64,000 nucleotides of DNA from Iphione sp. A-MEVVRFRX5. Lineage: Eukaryota. Under the pieces are notes generated by a model. The model was given only the letters and a program-made list of their open reading frames with translations, was not told the DNA's origin and did no database searches. Positions 27,658 to 62,900 of the stretch are shown in pieces. Position numbers and translations under genes: made by a program. The DNA lies in assembly GCA_976226885.1 (NCBI GenBank), contig OZ320316.1, positions 63,798,001 through 63,862,000 of the forward strand, in the 5' to 3' direction. How positions within the stretch are numbered: position 1 is the first letter of the stretch; every line of letters begins with the position of its first letter.

Positions 27658-30600
27658 AACACACACATACACAAATATTCTGATCTGCGAATAGAGTGAT
27701 GTGAACTTATGGCGAGGGTCGCTTGGTCGACTTTCTCACGTCGGTACAGACTTCCAGAGGGCGGGAGTCGGCATGGGAAGGTACACTCCATCATGGCCGC
27801 GCCAGGTGTGCACCGAACCCGCTTTCCCAGCCACATACAGCCCGACAGAACAGTGGTCCCGACCACAGGGAGGGGTTAGGGGCAGGGTAGAGGTCAGCAC
27901 TCACAGCAAGCGAAAGCCACGTGCTGATAGACGCCAGGCCCCTATAACAGAACCCTGTAGATCTTGTGATCTTCGCCGATAACATGTAGGATCAAAGACA
28001 GTCGCTATGACGGCAGCATGGTCACTGGTACCGACAGCAGACGCCGCGTTCTGAGAAGAATGTCAACTGCACCTAAACCACAACAACCACCGCACGCCTA
28101 TTCTAAACGTGACACACTGGCAGAGGCGCAAATCTGCACAGAGCCATTTTAGAATCCCTTCTAATTGTTTTACTGAGTGTGTTTTTGCTCAAAAGCCAAA
28201 TGCCTTGGAAATCTCATCTGAACGTTCAAACTGTGTGCGCGAAATATGGACTGAGAGACAACTAAAAAGTGAGAAAGATTAGATGACGACCTCCCTTTCG
28301 GGACTATCGAATACTATCAGTGCACTGCTAACCAACAGTACTCCTCAACAGGATTAGCCTTGACTGGCTGCCGTACTGTCTATAGATACGGAACAAACAT
28401 TTGATATTGGAACCATCTCATCTGAAATGCGATGGACTTAGCTTGTGCTCTGTACCTGACACAGAGCCGCTAATCACTCAAATGGCTGTGTACCAATGTA
28501 TATGCGGCATCGGATTACATTACTCCATAGTGGCTATGGGGAGTACGATGGAACACATTCTGTCATTCGACAAGCTGTCAGGACGGATGTCTTTGGGGCC
28601 TATGGGTAGGTAGATCAAGATATTATGAGAAAGCGCAATATCTTCTTCGGTCGATCTAGTAGTAGTGCCAACCCTAGCCCTGCCACACCATCACACCCGC
28701 TAGCCCCCAGTTATCAATGCAAACGATTCGGTTGATCCGCGGCGTGCCGCTCAGCGCCGTCGAATGCCCCAAAGTGTTTCCGCACGTTCTATCAACCACC
28801 AGGCGGCGGCCCGTAAGCAGCCGCCCACTCCAATTTCCTGCCACCGCACGCATCCTTCAGCGGCGCGGGAAATCAGCGCCGATGCGACGGTCGTCGATGG
28901 CGCCGTCGAGGGCGGCGCCATGTGGCCCATCACGTAGGGGGCGGTTGCTGTTTGTCCCGGCGACAAATGCCGAGTCCGTTCAGTGCGCTCTTCTATCTAG
29001 CACCCATATCAAGTGGTGGGAGAGGAAACTGCACGCGGTTATCTGCTTGGCGTTCTTGCCATTAGAACTGTCGCAAACCAACAGGCATACAGGGGCGATT
29101 TTCACCGAAATACATGTACCAAGAGTTCATGGCGTGACCTTTTCGGTGCGATGGTACTACTACACCAAAGGGTAGTCCCTTTTGCATTGATGAGAAAATG
29201 TACTCTAAGACTTCCTCCAGAAAAGGTTGCTATACTTGAGATGAGGATTTCTGCCAATGTGCATTCATATTGAAGTTTCAAAGGGAAATCTGACCTCTGA
29301 TGCCTTCCCCTATGCACGCATAAATGTGCACTGGCTTGACTGGAGGTAAGAAAAAGACTTCAAACCAATCCGTCGCTGGATTCTCTATCATTCTGGGAGT
29401 GCCCGTAGTCAGGGTAAGAAAACTCCCCCAAAGCTAAGATGACAATGAGTGAGCAGGATTTCCCCATCTTCTCTCCCTATTCGACATCACTGATATCGAT
29501 GGCGCATTGAAAAGACTGGTAGCAATATCAGCGGACCTCTCCCTCCTCTAACACTGTTACCTCAAATTGCATGTCATTGGCGTAATAGCGACCAATTTCC
29601 CCGAGCGCGCGCGACCATTTCCGATGCGCCGGTCGCCACAGCCTGCCGCCGCGCCCACCTTGTTTGCCATATAAAGCCCGACTTCCGGGGAGAAGACGAC
29701 AGGGCTTCTGACTGCCGCTAGCAGGGGGCGTAGTGTCGGTTTGATGGAAGGTAGAGGTTGGTGAAAGATATCAATGGCAGGACCCAATCCTCCCTAAAAC
29801 ATACGCACAAATAGACTACTGAGGTCAGAATGGGTCCTCAGTAACCCGGCAATATAACAACTCAGTCGGTTTTCCTATCCCCAACCCTCCCCGTTGCCCT
29901 TTAACTAGTCCTATTCCTAACGTCAACCCTAACCCTTCTCCACCTGCTGTCGCCACATCTGTCAATATGATTTGTTGCCGAACCGTCACTTTGCTAGTCA
30001 TTGTGTCAACAATTTGTAACGCTCGCAATCAGCATGCGAGGAAAGGCCAGTTCAGATTGTCTACATTTTATTTCGCCTCATCAACACACAGTCAATCAAG
30101 CATAAACTAATATGAACCTTGCTTATAATAATATGATACAAATATCTTGGTCGAGGACAAGTACCAACTGTTTCAAAGGCATAGCAATCAAACCCAGGAA
30201 GAATGTGAAGAGGACATGATATTGAACTAGCTTCAGCGAAATGAAAGTTTGTTACAACTGTGCACAGAGTACAAGCTGATAGATTCAGTCCAGGTTCTGT
30301 TACCGCCTCAAACATGCAGTATCTTAATAGGCTCTATCGAAAAAGATGCGGTTAGGTACAAAATATGAATACCTCTTCCGTCCTTCCAAGAGCCTACAGA
30401 GACGACCTCTCTTAGTAAATTACAGAACTCCTAGGTCTCTTTAGGTTGAGAGATCCACAAAGTTGGAATGCCAGATGATCAGCAGCGGTATGCCCAAGTT
30501 TTCACATAAGTGAGAGGGTTAAATGATATAGTTTACAGGAAGAAAACGGAACTGAAAGACGCCTGTTGACAGTTTTACATCGACCTGTGAGGAGAAAAGA

Positions 30601-33600
30601 AATAAAAGAAAGTGGACTTTTGAGATCTAGTGTGTGTGTATTGGTGGGCAAAATATATTGAAATGTAATCATTTCTTCTTCGAATCAAACGAAACAAAAA
30701 TACACCAGCAGGTGGGAGGTGGGAGACACAAACATAGCAAATTAGAGGTTCATATTGCTAGCCTGCAACATTTTTCCTTTAACTTATACAGGATATTTCA
30801 ATATGCTTGGTTTGTGAAAGGACTAGCATGATAATAGAAATCACTTTCATTATGAGAGCAAAATAAAAAGGGATTACAGACCTTTTGTGAAAGGTCACCG
30901 CCCTTGTCTGATGTATCCCTTCATACTGTACAGTCTGTAAAGCAGCACAGCCAAAAAGATTACACTGCCTCGAAAAAGGCTTTCACAAGAACACGTACAT
31001 CTAACAACCATAAGGTGAACACTGTGTTTGCCTTCTTCTGTGGGATCTTCAAACAGATGCAAGTATCATAAAGATGAAAGAGGTAGCTTTGGGAAAACGG
31101 AGTCCTTCATTTTCTGCCGTTATACATCCTCTTCAAAGACGTGAAAAGCATTTACCTCACACATGATGGAGCAAAACAAATGACCAGGGGAAAGCTAAGC
31201 ATGCGACATCAATTTGGAGTTACAAAAGGATTTCTGAGACAGTGCTGAAGATATCCAACTGTGAACTACCGTGAATGGAATGGCCATGCAAACAAGATAA
31301 ACAGTGATACACGAACATTCGCACTACTGAATAATTGTTCCTGAGATTAAATTGATAATGATGATGATTCCATATGCAACGCCTTCAGGTAAAAAGCCTT
31401 CGATGTATTGTGTTATGTTTTCCATCACGTTTTCCGCATAACGACATGTTATGATATGTACATGAATGCAACGGGAACTTTGGCATTACTAGATTTTGGA
31501 ATTCACAGTCACCCAGTGACCACTGGTCAATATTTTAGGGTGTGGACGTCAATAATTATTCTGGTAAGGCTGTGTACACATGTATCTGTAGAAAAGAAAC
31601 GTCTACGGGTCCGTAGCCGTGAAATACCTCCTGTTGTGATTATTTAAGTCCTCCTGTATGCAGTCCCAGATGTTTTTCTACCACTGGAGTCTGAGAAATG
31701 GATGGGTCATCTTAAAAAAAAATCCGTCGGCGACGGATTCAGAAAACGGATATGGAGCCGGATACATTTGAAACGGAGCCATGGTTAGATTTTTAAAAAA
31801 CGTCTACGGAGCCAGGTCCATTTTGAAAATATACGGATGCATGTGAACACTGCCTAACACTGTAAAATTTTGACACGAGTTGGTAAAATCACTGAGAAAA
31901 ACGTAGTGTATCATCTANNNNNNNNNNNNNNNNNNNNNNNNNNNNNNNNNNNNNNNNNNNNNNNNNNNNNNNNNNNNNNNNNNNNNNNNNNNNNNNNNNN
32001 NNNNNNNNNNNNNNNNNNNNNNNNNNNNNNNNNNNNNNNNNNNNNNNNNNNNNNNNNNNATAGGCCTTGGGTGTTTCTGATTACTTTTACTTGTATCGGA
32101 GAGGGTAACCAAAATGCCCTCTGGTTACATCTCGGGAATGGCTGCCTTCTGTTGTATTTGCCACTAAAACATATGATGTAACAGGGAATACATGCATTAA
32201 ACCTGTATGTACTGCTTGGAGGGGATGCTATTCATGGATGGAAATCGAGATTATCTTCAAGGAAAACAGATTTTCTACTCTCCATTCGGGACTGCTTTAT
32301 CTGCAGAAGTTTTTAGATTCAGTTCTCTAATATGGCCCTGTTATTACGTGATGCTTTTGTAACCTACTGTTAAGTTACCTCAACATTATTAACTTCTGGC
32401 ATTACGCTTACGTTACTATTCTTGTAATCCCCACTTTATTGTTGCGATAGCCATTAATATAGGTCGAAAACCTCACAAAAGGTCAAATGTATGGTGCTGT
32501 TCTACAATATGACGTGAGAGATAAACACGTAAAAGTACTACCAGTTTCGTAGGCATTCATTATTGAAAAGGTGGATGTGATGTGTTTTCAGGACCCTTTA
32601 CCCTGACGTGATTGTGCCCAATACTTTATGGGTGTCATTAGTGCGAAAAAAATCTATACATGCATTCGATAGCGTGCTTCAGATTACTGCAGCCCGCTGC
32701 AGCATCGGTCATATATGATGTTTAAAAAAGATAGTGAAACAAAAATGATCGGTGTCCCACCCCATCATCAGCAGATGAATCAGCGACCTTGCACGAATAT
32801 GTCCTTGTCATAATTGGAGTGCTGAACATATGTAATAATTCTTTCGAAGCGAAGTTGAAAATGCAGCAAGACAATAACACCATGGGAAAACAGCGGCCCT
32901 GCGTAACTCAACTGCAGAATATGGTGGCTGGCTCTATGATTTCAGTTGCGTGTCATGGTGGCATTTGCACTGCCATATCTTGAAGACACTGCGATTGATC
33001 CATACCGAACGGGATTGGGCGTCAAGAAATCCCAACCGACAAAGATAACCAGGGTGGGGATGACACTTCGCAAAACGTACAACCTCGCCTGCCTGGTGCA
33101 CTTTTTTCCCTCAGGAACATAGTGGCTCAACGTTGGCACTTGCCATGCGGCCGCCATCGGACTGACTGTTGAGGCGTGAGGTGCTCCCTCCACCTAAACC
33201 TTCACGGCTCGTGCTTCTCGCTATACCCTTCACACGAGGAAGGACTTCACGAGCCAACTCGGCAAAAAGACAACCCGTGCCGTGTCGCCAGCTTTGAAGC
33301 GCAGCGCCATCAGGCGGGCAAAGCGCGCGCTGCCATTAACGTCGAAGATTGCAGCGTATCTCATCGCACCTACAGGTTCTGCCTGACTAATGCCGGCGGC
33401 GATGGTTCAACCAGCCACACCAGCAGCTCGCAGTCTATCCATAACGTACAATATACCCGAAAAATACATGTTACTCAGTTCTTGACGCCCCCAACATTCT
33501 ACAGATTCACGGATATATACATATACACGTGTACATGTGTGTAACGCTATGTTATGTGTGTTTGGACACTGTAACGGCTGCCATCAACAAAGGCAGTGTT

Positions 33601-36600
33601 TCTGCTAGGACATGGCTGTATTTTCCATTCTGCCGTGTCCTGCTTCAGTACTCTATCGGAGGTAAGGATATGTATATTTAGATCTGCCTACATACGGTTT
33701 ATGTCTAGAGTGACATTTATGCGCGTCTTGGGGGAAATAGTTTTGTTATTTTTGTTGTTGAACTATAACTACGGAATCTTAATAATATCGTTGTCATTTC
33801 ATTATTAACACCACAACAAACTGGGCGGCACTAAAATTCTAAACACACCGATGAACATGATCTCATGCGTCTAGTGATGGACACACTATTAAAGGACGCC
33901 ATGTTTACAAGGACAGGCTAGGCTTCAAAAGAGGAGATTCACACCGCATGGATTTCAGCATGCGACTAGCGGGGAGTTTTTCCTCTGTTAGATTGATACT
34001 GACGCTAACCGTCCATCTGCGGGGGAAGAATCGTATATAGGATTTCGGTAGTTGATGTTAATATGCGGTGTCTGCGTTTGCAGATGGTACAGAGCCACTG
34101 TTTGGCTCTGAAACGTGACGAACCAACGTTCGCGAAACATTAAACAACGTCCATTTATAGTATTCTTTTGAGGGCAGGATCAAAGGGAGCAGTTGGTGTC
34201 AGAGGGTGGGTTCTGTTAATTCATTTGGCACAGAGCTAAAGGAATGACTCTCGAGGGAGACTACCGGACGGTGGGTGACATGCCAAGCAGGTCAGCTAAC
34301 CGTAAAAAAATCCATCCAGTTTTAAGTTGTTAGCATCTGCCTCCTTGCCAAGATAAGACAAGAACGCTTCTCTGAGACTCCCTATCCATCTCTCTTATTC
34401 GTGGAGGGAGTGGGAGGGGCGCTGTCATATGCAGGCAGGTAAGATTTTCTCACTTTTGCTACAGATGATACATGCGACGGATGCAAGTTTGCCGGGGTCA
34501 AAAACTACACACTGGAAAGGACATAATGCCATGGTGTGTATAAGCAGGCGTATCTTGTTAACCCATGGCGCATGTCAACTGCAGACACGGCCTGTCGCGA
34601 CACCCACGGGCTGTAGGACGTTAACCATGCGCCCAGCTTGTAAAAGGTCCACCAGGGCCTCGCAACCATCATGCCGCTCCTGAAGCAGCAATATGTGTGG
34701 TCCAACACGCTGCTTCAGTTTTCCAACCTACATCCCATTCCTGTGTTCAATTAAACCCCCCGCGCAACTAGAACATCTTCCGAGTATCTATACCCCCCCC
34801 CGGGCTTACAGCGGTACATAAAAAACGTGTATCAATCTACAGTTACCTACCGTTGAGTCATATCCCTAAATAATACAGAATCCGAATTTTTAAAAGAAAA
34901 AAGGAATCACCCCACGGTGTGGCCGTTGATGGCTTTATGTTGGATTTCAAAGCCACCGGCGTTGGGACTGTGGGGCTATCTCTAGCTGGTGATAGACTGG
35001 GCTGACTGAGGTCATTCCTGTGCAATGTCTTCGGCTCAAGAAGCTCACGTTCGCTGATAACTAGTGGTTGACATACGGAGCTGTCCAAATGTACACAAAC
35101 AGTGGGGCTGGTGATTAGAACCTTCCAGGGGAATGGTTTACACAAGCAGTCAACGTTTTACCCCTCAAGTTCCTCCACGCCTGACTTGAAAGTGTGCTGC
35201 TGCTGTTTTGTGGATAACGCTTCAGCCAAGAGCGTCACAGGATTTGTTTCGAGCCAATTCGACTTTAACATTAATTATTTCGAGGTAGTTTTAAAATACA
35301 AGCTGCGCACGACAGGCATAATGTAATGGACGTTGATACTCATCAATCACGACGTCACCACAGTGCCATGTGATAACCGCCATACGACTCACCTGCAAAA
35401 AATAAGACGAACACAACATATTAGTGAACATGGAAAAGTTTAGCATCAACAGCTTGAAATATCAGCATTCGGTAAGTTTTTAACAACAAAATGAACTTCC
35501 TTCCACACTCCTATTGGGCTAGGCCTGAAAGTTTTATGATGTAAAATTATTACTAGTGTAACAATATACTGTGATTGCGTTCGAAACCAAAATCTCCAAA
35601 AAAAAAATCTACACAATGATAAGTTACTACCAGAGTAGATTAACTGAAGACCCAAGAAATGTAACCATTGTCCATATATTTTTTATATTGTTATAACTAT
35701 TGCACATTGTTTTAAGCCCAGGTGTGTTAAGCCAGGTACAATGAAGTTATAAATTATGAAAGTTCACACAAATGATTAAAGATGAATCTTACATTACAAT
35801 ACATGTATATGCCTATGTTTGTATTATGCTTGTAAGCATGTATGTGTACACAAGCATGAAATCATGCATATATGTAGTTCTGCAGGTCAGTACATTCTTA
35901 GAATTGGGAATAAGGCCCCTTTTGCCCAGTAAACTGTAAACACAGGGTTGTCAAACCAAATTTGATCCTGAATTCTATGGGATCATATGGATGCAGTGTG
36001 GTATATTCATGGATTTATTGTTAATTTAAATGACCAACATAATATCAGGATTTATATCCTTGTCTAAAAATTTGAATTTAGCAAAAAAACTACAGAGCTG
36101 AAGAATGGGTGATAGTCAGGGAGTTTCTACATATTCTTATGTGACCTCTAAGGGCTGGTGAAAAGAAACTAATGATAATTTTGACATGGACTTAATCTAA
36201 AGGTAGTTCTACAGATGTCTTCATTATATCAGTGTTAGCTTTGAAATCAGTGCTAAATGATTATCATAGGCATAAAAATCATAATAGCTCAAAGAAGGAA
36301 ACCCGCTACCTTTCACCTCCACACTAGGTACACTGACCTATATATGGGTAAGGGTACCAGGCTTATCAGCTACTGTGATGTCAATCCCACTTGAAGAATG
36401 TTTTTATGAATATCTGTGTTCACACTCACACTTACCATAATAATGTGTGAGTTGTAACAGTTTCCACCACCAGTCCCAGTTTCAAGTCTATTTATTGGGT
36501 ACACAGGGCCTATATTTATAGCTGAGGTCACAAGACCAACACCAGGTGTAACCAATAAAAGTGGAGCATAGAATTAAAGGATACTAAGTAATCAAGCACA

Positions 36601-39600
36601 ACTCCAATGGAATGTTTCTGACCAATTCGAGACAGCAGCAAGATATAGTATAACCTCTCCAGTACAGGAGACCAATTACTGGGCAGTGGCCCTACAAAAA
36701 TGTAACTTTAATTTCCTAGGTGCCATTTGTGGTGCCACAGGCCTGCATTAGTAACCTGAACAGTCCTTATTTGGCTCTGTAGTGCCATGGACATGCAGTG
36801 GACGAACTCACTACTTCCTTATCTGGTAACAGGTGGCTACATGGTGCCATGTACATGTGCACTGAAACCCTTACTTGGTAGTGGATGATCCAGTGGTACC
36901 ATGGTTATGCAATCAATGACCCTAACAGTTCTGTGGTACCATAGTTATGCATTTATTGACCCTGGCAGTTCTGTGGTGCTACCAAGACTAGTACACATAA
37001 ACCATGCCATCTGGTAGACAGTTTCCAACTTTAGCAAACAGCAATACAATCATTTTATAACCTTTCTACACTATAGACAAATGCATTCAATGCCCTGGGA
37101 TAAGGTACCTATATGCTCAGAGATATAAGCCATCAATTGTACACATTTTCGACAAATAATCTACGTACATATCCAGTTCTATGTTCACAGTGGTCTTGGA
37201 TTTTGATTGAATTCCTATGTAAATATTTGAATTCAATGAAGGTGCATGTGTTTGCATCTGACGGGCAAAAATTAGGCATTTGTTGCACTGTCACACTATA
37301 TGTGCGACCACCCCTTCATTCCGAGCTGCAGTGCTTGTATTAGCGGTTTTGGTCGCATACTGGTCTGAGCTTATATATCATGAGAACACATTCCAAGCTC
37401 ATATATGGTCATTTTAAGGCTTTGGTCACTAAACAGTATGCTCCAAAATTGGCATCCGACTGTAGAAAGCCATCTTAGGGACATGTCTCTAATAGGAACA
37501 AGTCTCGAATGGGGACACTTTGAAGAAGAACGGATTGTCTTATCTACATATTGAAAGGAGGCTCTAAAAGGGACAAGTCACAATTAGGGATACTTTGGGC
37601 AAGAGCCATGAGTGTCTTGATTAGAGACTTTTCACTGTAATAGTAATTAGAAAAATATCCCTTCGCAATCACAGGGATGGGAGAGAGGACCCACATCGAT
37701 TGTAATGACGACATAGAACAGAGTTGGGTAAGAGAAGTGTTCATGTCACAGACAGTAGCTGTCCTGGCGAGTCGGCCCAGTCACCGCTGCTCTATGCAAG
37801 CCGGGGTGGTGTCGGTGGCCGCCCATACTGATAGGCAATCATCAAATTAACGGCACATCTCAAATGCTAATCTGGTATTTGCAAGAATTTACATAGCACA
37901 CAGCTTTCTCATTAGACAGGGAGGGCGAGACAATGGCTTCTATTATTTCATTAGAAGGGCTCAATCCCACAAAACATTTAATTAGCAACCTCATGAATAG
38001 AGGGAAAGAAGGCTTAATAAAAGTAAAAAAGAGAGCGTTGGCCCCATGACTGAGTCAAAGAGGAAGTCTTAATCTGCCTTACCCGATTTAAACGGCTCCT
38101 TCCAAAGGAGAAGCTGGAGTACCACACGTTTATCATAATTGCTGGATACGTGGGTATGTCTATGTGGTCCAGGGTGTCGAAAAGGATTCCCGTAGCAGTA
38201 CCTCTTTAAAGGAGGCTCGAGTGCAGAGAGGTGTATTGTGTTTTATTTCTGATAGGCAATGCTTCACGACTCACTGAACGCTATGTTCACGCTCAGCATC
38301 GATTAGTGGCTGAGTAAAAAGGCCGTGGGTGCTGAGGCGTTCTGCCAGCGGCTGGTGCCACGCGTCGCGACGCCCGCTGCCGCGCTGCGCGCCGGTCGCT
38401 TTGAAGTGTAAGCTGTCACACGCAGCCTGGCGCCCCTCGGCCCTCCCCCTGAAGCCCATGCTTCGATGGACGTGCATTAATGGCGTCCATAATAGCGCTG
38501 CCTGGGCGCTGTCTCGGCGCCAGCAGCCTCGCGCCCGTGAGGAACAGTACCAAACAACTTGTAGCCACCGGCAGCAACCCAAGCATGGCGTGCTCCTGTG
38601 TTTAGACCGCTGGGAATATTTCACTGCGAGGGGTCTTGGTCGCCCCAAACTTGGTCGGGGGCGGTCGATAGGCGGGATCTAATTCAATGGCGAGAACCAC
38701 GCGCGTCAAGCCACTCGCAAACGGCTCTCACCGCTTGTATCTTTGCCCTGTCAGACCGCGTCCGGGCTCCAACGGTGAGGCGGCCCGCCTCGATCAGTAA
38801 TCATCTCATCCAGGCCCGCCATTCACTCACCACTGCCCTCTATCAGACCCGGTATCGACCGTCCGCTGGTCTGCAGCCTACTGCCCTAACACCGCTCATT
38901 GCCACGGCCTCCTTCCTGCTTGATTCACCTCCAAGGGTCCTGGTCCGGGCCATTTGTCACACACAACCTTTAACGGCCTCACCACTCAGAGCCTACCAAT
39001 GTGCCTATGCATGGTCAACCAATCTGGTTTAGATCTCCCGGTATTATGGCGTCGGTCTTGATGGTGGCGATTCAAGCACATGCACTCCTTCACAGTTGGG
39101 TTCTTGGCTGGATGTATAAGTGACGGAATAAAGTTCCACCTCGGACATGCGCCATCGAGCTATACGATGCACACGGTTCGTATAAAACCGATACAGAATC
39201 AGACCCAATAATCTACAGCTCATTCATATTACATAAAATCGCAATATATGTATTCTAATAGCATCAGATAAGAAAGACCCATATGCATGTATAACAAAGA
39301 CCTTGGTTCTATTCCGTTCAAATGACCCCTCTCTGGCGGAGAGAGAAACACGACCCGCGCTCTGATAAGACCCTCTGTGTCAAGCCTGACCAGCATGGAT
39401 TATCTGAGAAAGCCATTCACTTTGCGCGATCATCAACAGTGACGGACCGAATTTAGGTCGGGCACAGGGGGTTCTAAATCACCGCGTTAGTGTGGTTGTT
39501 AATAATGAGATGAACCGGTCCAACTGACCCCTAATGGTCCTAGGCGTTCATCGAGAGACGCCAAAGAAACCCAAGCAACCTTACATCGGGTGTGCCTGCG

Positions 39601-54600: not shown

Positions 54601-57600
54601 GGATCAGATAAAGAGAACTTACGCCATTTTAAAACAGACTAGAAATCACTCGTACTAATTCAAAAATTGTCAGAAAATCTGCTGTCTTTATTGGAAAAAG
54701 CATGTGGAATAATCTAAACATTGAATTGAAATCATATACCAATATGAAATTATTTAAGAAACGGATAATGTAAATTTGTTAAGAGGTTTGGGAGGGAACA
54801 TATCTAAGATTACAAAGTACCTTGATGGTATCACATCATCCAAAAAGAGTAGTATGGGGCCATGCCTCTTCTATAACTGATGGGCTGGAGAAATTAATAA
54901 AATTTCATGTCTCAAGAAGTCAATTATCAAATAACAACATGGGGCAATGCCGATGTTGTTAATCAAAACCATGGGGATACTGTGTGAGAGAATTTGATTG
55001 GCATAAAACATGACATGTTAGTAAAGAAAAAACACATAGACAGCTTCGTTTGACTATCTCTCTCTGTTAGGTGCACCCATCACATTTCAATTCATGCCTA
55101 ACACTGTATATAGGCCATAATGTTAAGGGAAATTGGTGTATGTATATTTTTTAAAAGCTGGGAAAATATACTTTATGTGTACAAGTTCAGTGAAAATAAA
55201 GGTTTAATTTTTTTTTCTAAATGTGCTGAGAGTAATAATTTATTTTATGAAGCTATATATGCTGAAGCATGTTTTCCCATTCATTTCACGCCGATACACT
55301 ATCCATTACATCATGTATCATTCAACAGATGTGCTCCTTACCAAAATAAACAATATGCGCATGAATATGGACTAGTGTTATTTGTGTTGCTGCACTGGGT
55401 ACTAAAATAATGCTACCCGAACATAAAGCAAACTACATGTACGGTTTTAGTATATGACTTGTTATTTCCGGTACTGCTCGCTTTTACACGAGCGGCTGAC
55501 AATTTCTCAATAATTTGTTTCTGTCATGGAAGCATATAGTTGCCATAATGCACCACATGGCAGGAGGCACCAGAGAACAACTAATTCCAGATGAAAGAGG
55601 ACAGTAGTTTGGCCACCGCAAAATATGCAGCAAAGTCCTACCAAGCATCGGCGTCCTCTTTACAGGGAACAGTGGAGGGGAAAGTTGAGATGAGCTGCTC
55701 TTGTTAAACAACTGTTCATCTGGGATGGTCCCCTGACGTGCGCTGTAAGGACGCACATCAACAGTGGGACGACTGGGAAGGCCACCTTGTCATGAGTTGC
55801 TCAGGACGACCTCCGGGGAAGCTACTCTACAGGAAGGCCTAGAGGACCTAATGAGCCGCGTGATGCCCTAACCCCAGGGTCATGTTGCTACACCGCTCAG
55901 ACAGTGTTCTTTTCTAATAGCTTCCCACTATCAAGTTCTTCGGTTTTTTTTGCATTCACCATGACAAGGCCCGTCGGTCAACCTTCAAAGTCTGGGTGTA
56001 ACCGAGACCTAACTGTTGCCTTCCTGCCTGCCGAAAATGACATGATAGTCTTGGCGCAATGACCGCAGACCTATTGGCTGCCATCAATAAAACAAGGCAA
56101 AGATCCATAACTGTGCATCTTTGATGTGGATGAGTGGTGTGGACACCGGTGTCTGCCTGGACCCTAACGACCTGAGGCGACTACACCCGCCCGAGGGCCG
56201 ACCATCAAACATTCATTCTTCACTGCGGATCAAAGTCACTTTGTATTGATTATTGGCAGCTGTCTGCAAGTGGACGGGTGCAGTCCTCTTGTCAAGGTAA
56301 CAAAGACAGACACTGCATTCCCTGAGCCTGGGCATTAATACCAATCTTTGTCTTTACGATTAACCCCGCCAAACAAACAAATCAAAATCAGGAACAGCAG
56401 GTAATGGGAGGGCATTTGTTTGCCCATCTGAAAGATATTGGATCACTGTTGGCTAACAGAATAAACCTGCCCTCACAATAGTATGCTTTTCCTACTGCTG
56501 ATAAAAGTTGCAAGCGTGCGTATCTAATGCAAGACAAAATTGGCCAAATATATCCCCATCAACCCGGCGTGTGTACCTATTGATCCCGTCACCAACGTGT
56601 ATCTTTGTGGCCTTGGTCGGACCTCTTGTTCTCGGCCGCTATCGAAGAAAACACCGACAATACCATTTGATGGTGTGGTATCCACATCATCGCGCGCACA
56701 CGAAAGGGGTGTCTGAACGCTCCACAAATGTTAATTGGCTTTCCGCATGGCTGCAGTGGCAAAAATATTCCGCCCTCTTCACTTAACGAAAGCTCAACTC
56801 CGCCCTGCCCGTTTGGCCTCTTTTCTCCTGACGCCTCCGCAATGTGTACACCAAACACGAAAATCCCATTCATTGATTGATGGCACACTATCCTTTGTTC
56901 GTTCAGATTTTTTCCCCACTGTACAGGTCTCTCTCTCTCTTCTTATCAAACCAGCGACCTTACCTGCATTTATGAATATAAACTGGTTTTCGTATCCCAA
57001 CGTTGGTTTCATGGTTCGATGAGCGGTATGGATAAAGCGCACGGTGAGGTCCAACACACTCACCACCATACTGAACCATGTGTAGTTGAGGAAGACTAAT
57101 TAGGTACTTTCCTTAATGGTGACAAAAATGATTTGCGTCTTGAGAACAGATGGACGGCCATGCAATTTGACTCAATGAAGAGCATTTTTGTGCAAACTGA
57201 TTCTTCTCATCAATGGTCGGGCACCTGTGGTCGCGGGGCGTGAGGCGTGCGCCGTGCCGCTGATTACCTCTCCAGACTGTCAGCACCCAACCCATCACGT
57301 CATGGTGACACGTTTGACACCGTAGATCTGACATGTCGCCTTCAGCAAATGCCGCTCGGACGCAAATAGTTTTTAAAGAAACCTGCCTCTCATCGCATCA
57401 ACTAACCATAATTAAAGGCATCATTAAAAAATAGACGACATTCCTTCTTCCAAAGAGTGAAAAAGAGCAGAGGTACGTTTTGGCAGATTCCCCTTGGTAA
57501 ATGGCCTGGAAATAATAAAGTGGGATTTCCGCAACCACCAATGTTTCATAAAAACAGAGCTGTATGAGGAGGAAATACTGCAAGTTACTCCCCACGTCAG

Positions 57601-59885
57601 ATTGTACACATTCCTAACTGTGCCTCTTGGTGGTAATTTTCTGAGAAAAACATCTGCAAATGCCTTTATGTCCTTTCATCTTCTCGCTAAAGTAAGGTTT
57701 AATCTGTGCTCCATTCTGCCGCTACTGATGGATATCGTACAAAAGCATGTTGTAATAATGCAAACCCCACAGCTGTAACGATTTCCAAACAACGGTTGCT
57801 AATAAATACTACACCTACTGTGTACACACCGTTCTCTTATATACAACAATGCTAATAGCCTCCAATCATGTAACTTTTGTGATATCCATTTACCATAATT
57901 TTTCAATTATTTAAAGGGCTTAAAGTTTATGTAGTTCTGTTCATATTGACTTCTTTTGCAACGACAGGGTCTTTTTCGCCATTGCTACATCCATAACTAT
58001 ACCGTGCGTGCATACATGCGTAGACCGTTCTGCAAGTCCGCAATTTTTTTCTCAAATACTTCCACCTCCCGACAAGCCATTAAGGGTAGAACTCCTTCTG
58101 CAGATGCTATAGCTGGAAAGCTATGCTGGATGCAAGCAGCTTCGGCATTCCCGGCGCGCTCCTTTCCGTGCGAGATATGACACCTGTTTAAAAGAGCTCG
58201 TTATTCGCGCTGACCTTTGTGAAACCGTTCGTCGTGTGCAAGGAGAGTCTCCATAACACACACCTTCCTGGCATCACCTTTACTGTTCGACACTGTAGCT
58301 AATTGAGGTGTAAGGTAGAAGGCATAATATCTAATTTAACAGCTCGGGTGGCCTCTGGATGACCTGCAGTGATTAGCCTCCTCTAGCAGACATATGCTGC
58401 TCATGGAGGAGCTTCCGACTTCATTTACTTGATTACATTCGTTTCTAAGTAAAGCCAGCCCCGCTTATCCGAAGAGGGTGTCTTTCGTTTGATAGGGTTC
58501 AACTAAGTAGGGAGCTCAGATAAGCCAACATGAAATGTAGGAAAGTAAGCAAAACATGTTTGTGTGCATTGGGAATCCGGATACTGGTCCGGTTAACCAC
58601 GTCTGACATCAAACATAAATATATTTGTTTCCTATGAAAGTGTCTTTTACCGCGTTCGCCTCGAACGAAAAAAAACAGAGCTACATGTGACAGGCTCCAT
58701 GCTACTTCCAAAAGCCAATCTTCATCAGTACTCGGTAAGTTCCTTGCCTCATTAGTACGTGTATTTGACATCTAGGATGGTCCGGTTACATGCAACAACT
58801 GACCGACGGTAATGCATATAAGGCCATGCATGGGACATTTATCAAATTTTGATTACGTAAGCCCCACATTACATAGAGTGTCTACTGCCATACTTAAGAA
58901 AGCTGCTAGTTAGTGGGAAGAATATGCACCTTGCTTCGGCTGGCGGTTACCAGTCGCAGCTATCGGCACCCACCAGCCACCACAGCTCGACTACAGCTGC
59001 CAGACCAGAGCTCCGGACATTTCCTTTGGGGCCCAGAGGCTCGCTACAACGATTGGCGAATGGACTGTTTGGTAGCTGCGGTCTAGACACATTCCGATGC
59101 TGCAAGCGGTAGGGTCCATTGGGAACACACTGGCGAGCACTCCCCACGACACGACCTCCCTACTCTCTTTATAGACTGACGGATCTTATGGTGTCTATTT
59201 CCTTCAGCACATATCCGACAACAATACAGATACAAGCACATATTCACGGAAACGAGTCATGGATTCTCTGAGATCAACGACCAGGTGACATACAAAAATG
59301 GCAAGTCCACTTATATCGTTCAGCTAGTAAGACATCGACAGAATGCCACGCTTAGCCCTACACGCTCGTGGCACTCGTGTGCACTCGTTCCTTGCCTGTA
59401 GAGACTGCGTTTATGGCAATAAATGAGCAAATATCAGCGCAAGCACCAACCCTTGTCTACCAGGCGTCCATCCGGCAATGTTAGGCCAAGGAGCCGTCGA
59501 AGGGTCTGTCTGGACGGCGGCCGTGTTGGCGCTTATAACACAATTACAGCGCGCGCTGACCGCGCTCGACTCAAGCCTGATATCATTAGACCTTTTAGGC
59601 CCTGGTTGTGGAGTCCAGTCGAGCCTGTAATGGGCGAAGGCGGGAACCAAAGCTTCACTGCAGGAGAATGATCTAATCTAGGCCGTATCCGTCATCACCC
59701 GCATCGCTGGGCCTGCACCTTCTATACCGCCACACCCTTCCTCAATTACCCTCTTTGCATCCACTGGTACTTTCTTGCTCCCTCCCTGTCCTGTTATCTC
59801 CTATCACTTTCTAAACCTTTCTTTTCACTGGAATCTTCCAACCTGCCTTGGTGTCATCCCTCCAATCTATTTAATTATTAAGCCC

Positions 59886-59924
<39 letters not shown>

Positions 59925-62900
59925 ACAATACATCACAATTTCTTTGTACTATTGTCCTGCAAGAGATTACGTGTACGAAATGAGTTGCATGTATTTCATC
60001 TGGCATGTGTATGCCCATCAGCGTGTGTGTCTGTGTGGAGCACGTTTGAATTGTAATGGTTCTAACGCCTCTAAGAAACTAAAGTACCATTTCCCACAAA
60101 TTGAGTAAATATGGAACACATACAGTACGTCTCACAGCAACGCCTTTCAATCGCTGTGCTTACTGTCAACAGTGCTACTAAAACGCTCACCCCGAAATCA
60201 AGCATCACCTCGACATCACAGTTGTCCTACTCCGGCAATTTACTCCATTCCCCGAGCTAGGACTCTTACGACCGCATGTGAATTTCACTTTCGCTTCCCT
60301 CTGATATTACTTCCATCTCTCGAGAGCAGAGAACGGCGCTTGCTTGGCTCACCTGCCTACTACAAACGACATTGTCGAAGTGTTCTCGAATCACCCGCAC
60401 CTGCGGTTCGCCTATTACCCACCGTCGGCTGGCGCCCTCACCCACCTGTGTCTATTAATGTTGGGGAACTCTCTCTAATCACCATAGTAGTATGCTGAGA
60501 GCAGACCGGGGCCGGGGAGGAGGAGCAGCAGGACCAGGAGCAGGAGCATGCTCGGCAAGGCAGGAAGGTACTGAATCTCTCATGAGAAAATGTCCGCGTG
60601 CATTCAACGACCTGTACCCAGCAAGTAGCTTTTATTCAGATAGTATTATTGTCAAACGTCCCATTCACACACAAGAATACGTGACAGTGGATCCCTCTTA
60701 TGTTTGAAACAAAGCAGGAATGCCCGGTAAAAAAGGCGATTTGTTAACCAATTGCCTTCTCAAAACAGGTGGTGGGGCTTCTCTTAAGGGAAAAAGGTTT
60801 AAAAACTGTCCTGGTTAAAAAGGAAGGAATGCCCAGGTCCCCTCAATTAGCCCTCACACATGGTTTTGATCAGTAAAGCCGGAGCATTTTATGTGACTGA
60901 GGAGATGGGGAACAAAAGAGAGCGCGTGTGAATGAGCTGGGCGGGATTAAGGCGAGCTTAGGATGGAATGGGTTATGATAAGCGTGCCGTGGGTACCTTT
61001 GAATGGCCCCGAGACGAGGGAGGCTTCTCGCACTATAATGTAAGGGTCGCCGTGCCGTAGGGCCTGTGTTTTCACGGACAACAACCTCTCTAATTCCAGG
61101 TGCGTGCTGTCCTCTACGTGGTCATACTCAACTACTGTGTTCACTAATATGCCGGAGCGAGCCTCGCCTGCGGCTACACGAGGTGAACGATAGCTTTTGG
61201 TTTTGCATGGCATGGGATACATAAAGAGAACCTGGAGCCAATACTCTCGTGATATATAATACTTCCTGGCATGACGCGCCTATATGTAAATAGAGTTTCA
61301 CGCGTGGATAGCACTGACAGGGCAAAGCAGGCCCAATCTGACTACGTTTTCAGACGTACAACCTTTGATAGGTACAAGCACTTGTGAATTTATCCCCCCA
61401 AACTGGAAATTCCTCCGTTGGAGGTTTGGTCGACCTTCCAATTCAATATGATGAGTACCTATTTGGTTTGGCCTAAGCTGGACACTTTGCTAACGTTTCA
61501 GTGATGAGATGAGTCCTCTGGACATCAATGTTTCTTTCACTTCTGTCGCAACAAGGCACTGAACAATTCTATCAGGTGCTCTCCCTAAACTTCCTGCCCA
61601 ATGATGGTCCAAAGTTGCTGTCATTTTCTACCATGCTCTCTCCTAGATTTACTGTCTGGCATTGCTGAATACGATACCAACGACCCAGTGCTGCCCACCA
61701 ATATCCATCAACGATCTCGTAAACAGCTGCCAGGGTGATTTCTCATTTTATTTTAGCGCCCTCTTTGAGTACGAATGAAGCAAACCGCAATGCTGGGAAC
61801 CTCACCTGGCTACATGTCAATTTAACGACTACATTTACCATGAAATCCAAGCGGTAAATACATCATGGTGCAGGCGAAAGTGACAGCGTAAAGATGACTC
61901 TCCCGAGAGGCATGTTTCTGTAAAAGGCAAGCTTTCGATGGATTTCTTGCTGAGCTTAATGCAAACAGTTCCCGTTTGTGTCTCACGCGATTACATCACT
62001 CTGTAATGAACGCATTGGTTTAAGCTTATATATAAACTGCACGTGTCGGCGGTGCTGAGAGCGGATGGTGTACATCAGCGCTGATGTCGCTGCAGTATTA
62101 AATCCATAGACAGGGTACAGTGCTTTCACAGAAGACAACCCAGCGATAATGTTTCACCAAATGAGACATAAACACGCATATATCTGACCAAATAGGATTA
62201 TTAATTCACTTCTCTCCGGGAGAAGAGTACGAGCACCCTCTCCGAGAATTGGACAAACGGGAATGTACAGGATAGCTGTCTTGAAACTAGGACCCGGTTT
62301 CCATATGTGAAGAAACATGTGTAGAGGGTTTGGGAAGTGTTTGTGTGCATGTGTATGCGTGACATCACAGAATTACTTTTCCGCAAGCTCATACACAAGG
62401 GTGTCCTTTGAGGGGCAGTGTGTGAAAGAGGGGAAAAACAGGGAATACAACAAAACACACCAAAAACAGCTTATTTCTTTTTTAAAAATCACAAAAAACA
62501 GGAAATTTAATTGAAAATTGGCCAAATAATGGCTTATTTCATGGAAATTCAGCAGAAAAATAGCAAATATAATTGGAAAAGTCCAGAAAAAGACAAAATT
62601 GTGTGTAAATGTGCATAAATGACAGTGAACAGAGCGCAAAAATGAGTAAATATGAAACGGCAGTGCGTTACCATGTGTGTGTGCATGTGCCTGGGAAATT
62701 ATCAGGCACGCACAGCTATGCATGTGTACACACATGGCCACGGACATATGGAAACCAGGCCTTAGGCCAAGCCAGGNNNNNNNNNNNNNNNNNNNNNNNN
62801 NNNNNNNNNNNNNNNNNNNNNNNNNNNNNNNNNNNNNNNNNNNNNNNNNNNNNNNNNNNNNNNNNNNNNNNNNNNNNNNNNNNNNNNNNNNNNNNNNNNN

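What the first reader, a model, noticed from the sequence alone, without database searches (positions are those of the whole stretch)
35291..35426. Textbook recursive-splicing (ratchet) site near the middle of the 46.6-kb Fat intron
Seen: on the gene's sense (minus) strand the intron contains CACTAAT-ATGTTGTGTTCGTCTTATTTTTTG-CAG|GTGAGTC. This is a consensus branch point 28 nt upstream, an AG-free pyrimidine tract as strong as the real acceptors of this gene, and a CAG immediately followed by a consensus 5' splice site. It is the only such full-strength juxtaposition I found in the window, and it splits the intron into 27,774 and 18,858 nt. If read as an exon in phase 0, the downstream sequence gives VSRMAVITWHCGDVVIDEYQRPLHYACRAQLVF and then TAA (35293-35291), i.e. 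a premature stop. Established: recursive splicing at AG|GT sites is known from long Drosophila introns (e.g. Ubx) and from long vertebrate neural adhesion genes (e.g. CADM1, ROBO2), where RS-exons often carry stop codons. Inference: this Fat intron is removed in two steps, or the site gates a poison or truncating exon. I know of no report of recursive splicing in a Fat gene or in lancelets.
Basis: partly seen in the sequence, partly recalled or inferred. Interest (0 to 1): 0.8.

Follow-up and report, generated by a model that had tools for sequence, protein, structure and literature searches.

The report
Probable recursive splice site, Fat intron
A 46.6-kb intron of a lancelet Fat1-type cadherin gene contains one exceptionally strong fused acceptor-plus-donor site, and a ribbon worm has the same kind of site at the same relative place in the matching intron, so the intron is probably cut out in two steps, although no RNA data could be examined.

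Summary
On the minus strand, CACTAAT, a 24-nt AG-free pyrimidine-rich tract and CAG|GTGAGT sit at 35393|35392. The site lies in a 46,632-nt phase-0 intron of a Fat1/kugelei-type cadherin gene.

It is the only AG|GT on either strand of the intron with both halves at real-splice-site strength. Null models expect 0.005-0.02 such sites per intron.

I found no repeat copy, inverted-repeat flank, Pfam domain, Rfam family or polyadenylation signal at or near it.

I compared 837 kb (both strands) from the window and five relatives' Fat1 loci. Only one other AG|GT comes close. It lies in Lineus longissimus, in the same orthologous intron (19.8 kb), at fraction 0.592 versus 0.596 here, and has a 31-nt cryptic exon. 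Relatives whose intron is 5-11 kb have no such site.

No RNA runs were listed and no other lancelet sequence could be reached, so use of the site is inferred, not shown.

The scan has already flagged the same kind of site elsewhere in this genome, including the neighbouring 55.8-kb intron of this gene and a Dachsous intron.

A human FAT3 candidate recursive site is already tabulated (PMC6110456).

Verdict: a probable fly-type recursive splice site, a new member of a known kind.

The parts
63167..63228 (-). Upstream 62-nt exon, (G)LITTTNRRLDREKQEEHILE. Its last bases, GAG, would be joined to the site in the first splicing step.
   Evidence: It is 80-85% identical to fish Fat1a residues ~1194-1213. 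The same 62-nt exon is present in Tubulanus and Lineus, and homologous small exons sit at the same position in Chelmon, Ptychodera and Albula.
16535..63166 (-). The 46,632-nt phase-0 intron ('intron C'), which includes three N runs totalling 487 nt.
   Evidence: Homologues align across HILE|V without a gap, so no coding exon is missing.
35420..35426 (-). Branch-point-like CACTAAT, with the candidate branch A at 35421, 28 nt before the AG.
   Evidence: It matches the yUnAy consensus. Use as a branch point is inferred.
35396..35419 (-). AG-free pyrimidine-rich tract (75% pyrimidines in the 20 nt scored) with TT at -5/-6.
   Evidence: The 3'ss PWM score is 13.0, against 9.3-16.2 for the six real acceptors in the window.
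35393..35395 (-). CAG acceptor. The last intron base of the first segment is 35393.
35386..35392 (-). GTGAGTC donor directly abutting the acceptor. After the first step it would read GAG|GTGAGT.
   Evidence: The 5'ss score is 12.7 in place and 11.7 when regenerated, against 6.7-10.7 for the six real donors.
35359..35392 (-). Possible 34-nt cryptic recursive exon, ended by the weak donor GTG|GTGACG. Inclusion would shift the frame and reach a stop six codons into the next exon.
   Evidence: This is inferred from layout only. The Lineus site has a strong donor at +31.
35291..35293 (-). TAA stop reached in phase 0 if the sequence after the site is read as exon.
16220..16534 (-). Downstream 315-nt cadherin exon (VTVTDNGRP...), the final ligation partner.

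Best explanation
The site is a fly-type recursive splice site (ratchet point) that lets the spliceosome remove the 46.6-kb intron of this Fat1-type cadherin gene in two steps. In step 1, the donor after the 62-nt exon (63167|63166) pairs with the acceptor CAG at 35393, probably using the branch A at 35421, and a 27.8-kb lariat is released. Ligation puts ...CTTGAG next to GTGAGTCG, which recreates a strong donor, GAG|GTGAGT. In step 2, this recreated donor pairs with the true acceptor at 16535|16534 and an 18.9-kb lariat is released. The mRNA is identical to that from one-step splicing. Initial recognition may use exon definition across a 34-nt cryptic exon ending at the weak donor GTG|GTGACG. 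Because the recreated donor is far stronger (11.7 against 4.6), that cryptic exon would normally be skipped. Shown here: the sequence layout, its strength, its uniqueness and the parallel site in a relative. Inferred: every RNA-level step.
For: (1) The motif is present as described. (2) Both halves reach or exceed real-site strength. The 3'ss scores 13.0 against 9.3-16.2 for real acceptors. The 5'ss scores 12.7, or 11.7 when regenerated, against 6.7-10.7 for real donors. The next best AG|GT in the intron has a weaker-half score of 6.0 on the sense strand and 7.8 on the antisense strand. (3) Chance expectation is 0.005-0.02 per intron. Among 2,895 AG|GT sites in 837 kb (both strands; window plus five Fat1 loci), only two have a weaker-half score of 9 or more. 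They are this site (12.7) and L004:32027 (10.7). (4) Both outliers lie on the sense strand of the same orthologous intron, in the two species where that intron is longest: 46.6 kb here and 19.8 kb in Lineus. Their fractional positions are 0.596 and 0.592. The Lineus site has TTTTTAG|GTAAGT, a 30-nt AG-free zone and a strong second donor at +31. (5) Relatives whose matching intron is 5-11 kb have no full-strength mid-intron site. This fits the fly rule that recursive introns are 11 kb or longer, averaging 45 kb, with segments averaging 18 kb (bioRxiv 10.1101/006163). In flies, 63% of introns over 40 kb carry a site, usually near the midpoint (PMC6110457). (6) TT at -5/-6 is found in 99.5% of fly ratchet points and is present here. 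(7) There is no sign of a repeat or coding origin and no Rfam match.
Against: There is no RNA evidence of any kind: no runs were listed, so no junction reads, sawtooth coverage or lariats could be examined. Conservation in other lancelets could not be tested. The window and Lineus sites share no flank similarity, so the parallel is at motif level, and the matching position was noticed after the fact. The downstream donor that would define a recursive exon is weak here (4.6). The first-stage reader scans hundreds of windows, so a few chance sites of this strength are expected genome-wide. One antisense chance site passed a slightly looser filter in 837 kb (L002:56368). The splice-site score matrices are approximate and human-like, not lancelet-specific.
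Confidence: 0.6

Rival explanations
1. Chance juxtaposition with no role. A consensus donor happens to follow a pyrimidine-rich acceptor, and the site is ignored or used only as splicing noise.
For: The core AGGTRAGT occurs at the chance rate: 0.9-1.5 expected per intron and 1 observed. The genome-wide scan gives many opportunities. One antisense site in a fish locus passes a slightly looser filter. No RNA or conservation data are available.
Against: The full composite is expected only 0.005-0.02 times in this intron. It exceeds every other non-exonic AG|GT in 837 kb by about 4 bits on its weaker half, apart from the Lineus site, which lies in the same orthologous intron at the same fractional position. 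A site this strong on the sense strand would be hard for the spliceosome to ignore.
Confidence: 0.2
2. A regulated poison exon rather than a constitutive ratchet. The acceptor at 35393 plus a downstream donor (+34 or +344) defines a cassette exon, and its inclusion introduces a premature stop that lowers Fat mRNA through nonsense-mediated decay.
For: All three reading offsets after the site hit early stops, and including the 34-nt exon gives a stop six codons into the next exon. Vertebrate recursive exons behave this way (established knowledge, Sibley et al. 2015). The Lineus site has a strong second donor at +31.
Against: In the window the downstream donors are weak (4.6 and 6.3), while the regenerated donor scores 11.7. 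Competition should therefore favour skipping.
Confidence: 0.1
3. A by-product of a mobile element or an insertion junction. The motif would belong to a repeat consensus, or would have been created where two unrelated blocks abut, and it acts at most as a cryptic site.
For: Base composition changes near the site. A 1.5-kb CpG-free, AT-rich block ends about 200 nt upstream, and the sequence downstream is CpG-rich. Genome-wide copy number could not be checked.
Against: There is no second copy in 64 kb, no terminal inverted repeats, and no Pfam domain in any of the 18 intron ORFs tested, which include the longest and those nearest the site. An insertion junction would not explain the equivalent site in Lineus.
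Confidence: 0.07
4. Only one half is real. Either the donor belongs to an alternative first exon, or the acceptor belongs to an alternative terminal exon that yields a truncated, secreted Fat ectodomain.
For: A TATA-like TATAAATA (36520-36513) and an ATG|GTAAGT donor (36436|36435) lie about 1 kb upstream, so cryptic transcription units are conceivable. The phase-0 reading ends after 33 codons.
Against: There is no AATAAA or ATTAAA within 2.5 kb downstream. The 500 nt upstream are AT-rich and CpG-poor with no promoter-like island. Either reading leaves the other consensus half to chance (about 1/2000 for GTRAGT at an exon start, about 0.02 for the tract).
Confidence: 0.03

Closest known systems
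Drosophila zero-nucleotide ratchet points (Ubx, kuz, luna and others; Duff et al., bioRxiv 10.1101/006163; Pai et al., PMC6110457)
   Same: A fused 3'ss/5'ss around AG|GT on the sense strand, a prominent pyrimidine tract with TT at -5/-6, a host intron of 46.6 kb (fly mean 45 kb), segments of 27.8 and 18.9 kb (fly mean 18 kb), a position near the midpoint, and a host gene for cell adhesion and morphogenesis.
   Different: The organism is a cephalochordate, where the process has not been reported in the searchable library. No junction, lariat or sawtooth data exist. The donor is GTGAGT rather than the fly-preferred GTAAGT. The cryptic-exon donor is weak.
Vertebrate recursive exons (CADM1, ROBO2, ANK3 and others; Sibley et al. 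2015, cited from general knowledge; Zhang et al. 2018, PMC6110456)
   Same: A long intron of a neural or adhesion-type gene, AG|GT with a regenerated donor, and stop codons in the sequence that would be included.
   Different: Vertebrate sites depend on a defined recursive exon with a competing donor. Here that donor is weak. The host intron is far shorter than most vertebrate recursive introns.
Human FAT3 candidate recursive site (supplementary file 7 of PMC6110456)
   Same: The same gene family (Fat1/2/3 group) and a giant intron in the 5' third of the coding region.
   Different: It lies in a different intron, the 169-kb one after the first large coding exon, two introns upstream of the one here. 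It sits 8.6 kb from the 5' end, not near the middle. It is supported only by a few junction reads in one table.
L004:32026|32027 in intron C of Lineus longissimus Fat 1-like
   Same: The same orthologous intron after the same 62-nt exon, the sense strand, the best AG|GT of its 94-kb locus, TT at -5/-6, an AG-free zone, a fractional position of 0.592 against 0.596, and a short cryptic exon ending GTG|GT (31 nt against 34 nt).
   Different: There is no alignable flank similarity. The intron is 19.8 kb. The second donor is strong (9.7). It too lacks RNA evidence.

Membership tests
Recursive splice site, fly-type ratchet point | Juxtaposed consensus 3' and 5' splice sites around AG|GT on the transcribed strand | tested here: met
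   3'ss 13.0 and 5'ss 12.7, both within or above the range of the gene's real sites.
Recursive splice site, fly-type ratchet point | Prominent pyrimidine tract with TT at -5/-6 (99.5% of fly sites) | tested here: met
   (TTTTTTGCAG); criterion.
Recursive splice site, fly-type ratchet point | Lies in a very long intron (11 kb or more, typically over 40 kb) and divides it into segments of some 10-30 kb | tested here: met
   a 46,632-nt intron split into 27,774 and 18,858 nt. Criteria.
Recursive splice site, fly-type ratchet point | Ligation to the upstream exon regenerates a functional donor | tested here: met
   GAG|GTGAGT scores 11.7, above all six real donors. This is a sequence prediction only.
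Recursive splice site, fly-type ratchet point | RNA intermediates: exon-to-site junction reads, sawtooth intron coverage, segment lariats | not testable with these tools
Recursive splice site, fly-type ratchet point | Motif conserved in related species while the flanks diverge | tested here: inconclusive
   No lancelet orthologue could be fetched. A distant relative, Lineus, has an equivalent site in the matching intron at the same fraction but without alignable sequence. Relatives with short introns lack it.
Recursive splice site, fly-type ratchet point | Short cryptic exon with its own downstream donor for exon definition (Joseph et al. 2018, from general knowledge) | tested here: inconclusive
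   within 200 nt only GTG|GTGACG at +34 (score 4.6). Lineus has GTG|GTAAGT at +31 (9.7).
Vertebrate-type recursive (poison) exon | Included sequence carries a premature stop, and inclusion is decided by donor competition | tested here: inconclusive
   stops are present in all offsets; the competing donor is weak, so inclusion is predicted to be rare. No RNA data.
Transposon-borne splice-like motif | Surrounding sequence is repeated or carries element hallmarks | tested here: not met
   no copy, no terminal repeats and no element domains within the window. Genome-wide copy number was not testable.

The most novel reading that the evidence does not exclude
The recursive site in this particular intron of Fat1-type cadherin genes may be ancient. 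On this reading it has been kept since before lancelets and nemerteans diverged, or regained repeatedly, at about 59% of the intron's length whenever the intron is long, while all flanking sequence turned over. That would imply selection on where a giant intron is subdivided. It would also imply that recursive splicing is a general bilaterian solution rather than a speciality of flies and vertebrates.
Probability: 0.12. Interest if true: 0.8.

Novelty: new member of a known kind. Interest (0 to 1): 0.55.

Why it matters
Recursive splicing has been demonstrated in flies, mice and humans, and tested in lungfish. Whether it is a general animal mechanism for very long introns is still open. Here a compact-genome chordate outgroup (a lancelet) and a nemertean each carry a full-strength site in the same orthologous giant intron. 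This gives a concrete pair of loci that one RT-PCR each could test. If both are confirmed, the phylogenetic range of the mechanism widens and the length-dependent rule seen in flies gains support. It would also give a route to ask why the subdivision point sits where it does. For annotating this genome, the site is a strong decoy acceptor and donor that gene predictors could mistake for an exon boundary.

Tried and rejected
RNA evidence:
- Two run searches were made, one on the intronic 2 kb and one on an exon-bearing 1.3 kb. Both listed nothing, so read laying was never possible.

Lancelet orthologues:
- A search with the ORF spanning the site found no protein sharing words.
- An exhaustive HMMER search with the 105-aa exon was swamped by multi-repeat cadherins.
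- A region search with the Tubulanus orthologue and a profile that included the window's exons returned no Branchiostoma protein (checked by BLAST).
- A 24-nt exact scan of metagenome contigs found nothing.
- Conservation among lancelets therefore remains untested.

Relatives:
- Haliotis, Limulus, Liolophura and Gigantopelta genes span more than 100 kb, so no DNA was served.
- Four proteins could not be fetched: three were not on record and one exceeded the tool's 5,000-residue limit.

Other readings of the locus:
- Repeat or transposon origin was rejected within the limits of the window.
- No known RNA family matched.
- No polyadenylation signal for a terminal-exon reading was found.
- A hidden coding exon inside the intron was rejected, because homologues align without a gap across the junction.
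- Sequence-level homology between the window and Lineus sites was rejected: flank alignment scores are at or below the shuffled mean.

Literature:
- A search for recursive splicing in fly kug, CadN, fat2 or dachsous in the supplements of PMC6110457 found nothing under those symbols.
Full report
**What is there**

Read on the minus strand, the window shows CACTAAT (35426-35420), then 24 nt without any AG and rich in T and C (35419-35396). CAG follows (35395-35393), directly abutted by GTGAGTC (35392-35386).

**The host gene**

Six minus-strand exons in the window are colinear with residues 1242-1646 of a protein named 'protocadherin Fat 1-like' in Tubulanus polymorphus (P0067). The exons are 63228-63167, 16534-16220, 15475-15262, 6988-6849, 5957-5747 and 2824-2549.

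The best single-domain matches lie at residues ~1200-1350 of Fat1, Fat3 and kugelei-type proteins of 4,200-4,900 residues. The gene is therefore a Fat1/kugelei-type atypical cadherin.

The 62-nt exon ends with a complete codon (...HILE), and the next exon begins VTVTDNGRP. Homologues align across this junction without a gap. The interval 16535-63166 is thus one phase-0 intron of 46,632 nt with no missing coding exon. It contains three N runs totalling 487 nt, so the length is slightly uncertain. The site divides the intron into 27,774 and 18,858 nt.

**Is it more than chance?**

- **Core octamer.** AGGTRAGT alone occurs at the chance rate: one in the intron against 0.9-1.5 expected.
- **Composite site.** The full site needs Y at -3, at least 75% pyrimidines over 20 nt and an AG-free zone. 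Markov order-1 and order-3 models expect 0.005-0.0225 such sites per intron, and 0-0.005 if a YTRAY branch motif is also required.
- **Score matrices.** I used approximate, human-like matrices, which is a stated limitation. The acceptor half scores 13.0, against 9.3-16.2 for the six real acceptors in the window. The donor half scores 12.7, or 11.7 once joined to the upstream exon's GAG, against 6.7-10.7 for the six real donors.
- **Other AG|GT in the intron.** The next best has a weaker-half score of 6.0 on the sense strand and 7.8 on the antisense strand.
- **Other AGGTRAGT in the window.** The two others have no pyrimidine tract.

**Is it something else?**

- There is no second copy of the surrounding 1.2 kb in the window and no flanking inverted repeats worth the name.
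- No Pfam domain was found in the 18 intron ORFs tested, which include the longest and those next to the site. No Rfam family matched.
- No AATAAA or ATTAAA lies within 2.5 kb downstream.
- The ORF that spans the site has no relative in the protein collection.
- The site therefore does not look like part of a gene, a known RNA, a terminal exon or an autonomous element. A non-autonomous repeat cannot be excluded without the whole genome.

**The same intron in relatives**

An earlier scan note on the neighbouring intron of this gene (s1-334834) prompted me to fetch Fat1-type loci from five other animals.

The small exon homologous to the 62-nt exon, and the two intron positions that flank it, are conserved in all five. 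The exon was read as exactly 62 nt in the two nemerteans. The five species are two teleosts (Chelmon, Albula), a hemichordate (Ptychodera) and two nemerteans (Tubulanus, Lineus).

| Species | Length of matching intron | Full-strength mid-intron site |
|---|---|---|
| Lancelet (window) | 46.6 kb | yes (score 12.7) |
| Lineus | 19.8 kb | yes (score 10.7) |
| Tubulanus | 11.4 kb | no |
| Ptychodera | 10.2 kb | no |
| Chelmon | 5.7 kb | no |
| Albula | 5.0 kb | no |

I pooled the window and all five loci on both strands, giving 837 kb and 2,895 AG|GT sites. Only two sites have a weaker-half score of 9 or more: the window's site (12.7) and L004:32027 in Lineus (10.7).

The Lineus site is on the sense strand, inside the matching intron (L004:20329-40099). 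It splits that intron into 11,698 and 8,073 nt, a fraction of 0.592 against 0.596 in the window. It reads TTTTTAG|GTAAGT after a 30-nt AG-free zone, regenerates GAG|GTAAGT (11.7), and is followed 31 nt later by a strong second donor, GTG|GTAAGT (9.7). The window has GTG|GTGACG (4.6) at +34.

The relatives with short introns have no full-strength mid-intron site. Ptychodera has only a weak one (6.5/6.2) at 58% of the intron. Tubulanus's best site lies 185 nt before the real acceptor.

The flanks of the window and Lineus sites are not alignable. The parallel is therefore one of layout and position, not of inherited sequence, and the positional match was noticed after the fact. A slightly looser filter (70% pyrimidines) also passes one antisense site in a fish locus, which shows that chance sites do exist at about one per several hundred kilobases.

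**How this compares with what is known**

In Drosophila, ratchet points are fused 3'/5' splice sites, and 99.5% carry TT at -5/-6. Their host introns are 11-133 kb (mean 45 kb), with segments averaging 18 kb (bioRxiv 10.1101/006163). In that species, 63% of introns over 40 kb carry at least one high-confidence site, usually near the midpoint (PMC6110457). The window's site meets every one of these sequence and geometry criteria.

The phenomenon has been described in flies, mice and humans, and tested in lungfish (10.1101/2024.12.11.627982). In the searchable library, no paper connects it with amphioxus: two papers contain both terms, and by title and abstract neither is about this.

For Fat genes, a candidate site in a 169-kb intron of human FAT3 is listed, with junction-read counts, in a supplementary table of PMC6110456 (table descriptions). 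It lies two introns upstream of the one studied here.

**Mechanism proposed**

- **Step 1.** The donor at 63167|63166 is spliced to the acceptor at 35393, releasing a 27.8-kb lariat.
- **Regeneration.** The exon's GAG now abuts GTGAGT, which recreates a donor stronger than any real donor in the window.
- **Step 2.** That donor is spliced to 16535|16534, releasing an 18.9-kb lariat. The mRNA is unchanged.
- **Recognition.** A 34-nt cryptic exon may help initial recognition. If it were included, the frame would shift and a stop would follow six codons into the next exon. Donor competition (11.7 against 4.6) argues that inclusion is rare.

All RNA-level steps are inferred.

**Weighing the evidence**

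For one pre-specified intron, the chance probability is about 1-2%. However, the first-stage reader has looked at hundreds of windows of this genome (712 with notes), so a handful of chance sites of this quality are expected among everything scanned.

Four points raise the odds above that background:
- The site is on the sense strand of a giant intron and near its middle.
- The only comparable site in 837 kb of related loci lies in the same orthologous intron, at the same fraction.
- Presence tracks intron length.
- According to unverified scan notes, the adjacent 55.8-kb intron of this gene and several other giant introns of this genome carry similar sites.

I put the recursive-site reading at 0.6 and pure chance at 0.2. 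The remainder is shared among a regulated poison exon, a repeat or junction artefact, and a half-site of another transcript.

**What could not be done**

No sequencing run was listed for either stretch I tried, so no reads could be laid. No lancelet orthologue could be reached through the protein tools or through a metagenome scan. Four relatives' genes were too long to be served. The decisive tests are listed under next steps.

Noticed in passing
window 35600-37200: A block of about 1.5 kb that is almost free of CpG (observed/expected 0-0.11 in 250-nt windows). The rest of the 46.6-kb intron runs at 0.5-1.0. The block ends about 200 nt upstream (in gene sense) of the site, and the sequence just downstream of the site is CpG-rich. 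It could be an old, heavily methylated segment or an element of a different origin.
   Followed up: partly
window 63167-63228; L001:11608-11679; L002:27182-27253; L003:24804-24869; L004:20267-20328; L005:26166-26231: The small exon encoding ...TTT.RRLDRE.QEEHILE, and both flanking intron positions, are conserved from lancelet to teleosts, a hemichordate and two nemerteans. It was read as exactly 62 nt in the window, Tubulanus and Lineus. In every species it is bordered by some of the longest introns of the gene.
   Followed up: partly
L004:32026-32058 (Lineus longissimus Fat 1-like): A full-strength recursive-type site, TTTTTAG|GTAAGT, with a 31-nt cryptic exon ended by GTG|GTAAGT. It is the best AG|GT of the 94-kb locus and is not repeated within the locus.
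   Followed up: partly
window 16534, 15475, 5957, 2824: Four of the six real acceptors in the window are followed by GT (AG|GTG..., a valine codon opening a cadherin exon). As donors they score up to 8.6. Real exon starts are therefore the main look-alikes in any AG|GT scan of cadherin genes.
   Followed up: yes
window 36431-36520: Inside the CpG-free block on the gene strand, a TATA-like TATAAATA (36520-36513) is followed about 75 nt later by ATG|GTAAGT (36436|36435). This may be a cryptic promoter plus first-exon donor, or chance.
   Followed up: no
L001:22865 and L003:30795: In Tubulanus the best AG|GT (CCCAG|GTGAAT, scores 11.1/8.8) lies only 185 nt before the true acceptor of the matching intron. 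Ptychodera has a weak AG|GT (6.5/6.2) at 58% of its 10.2-kb matching intron.
   Followed up: no
window 31918-32059, 49724-49860, 62777-62984: Three N runs (142, 137 and 208 nt) lie inside the intron, so its stated length and the split fractions are approximate. They were left as they are.
   Followed up: no
window 38000-40000: A GC-rich stretch (0.52-0.57 GC, CpG observed/expected 0.9-1.0) with overlapping ORFs of 125-155 aa on both strands and no Pfam match above threshold.
   Followed up: partly
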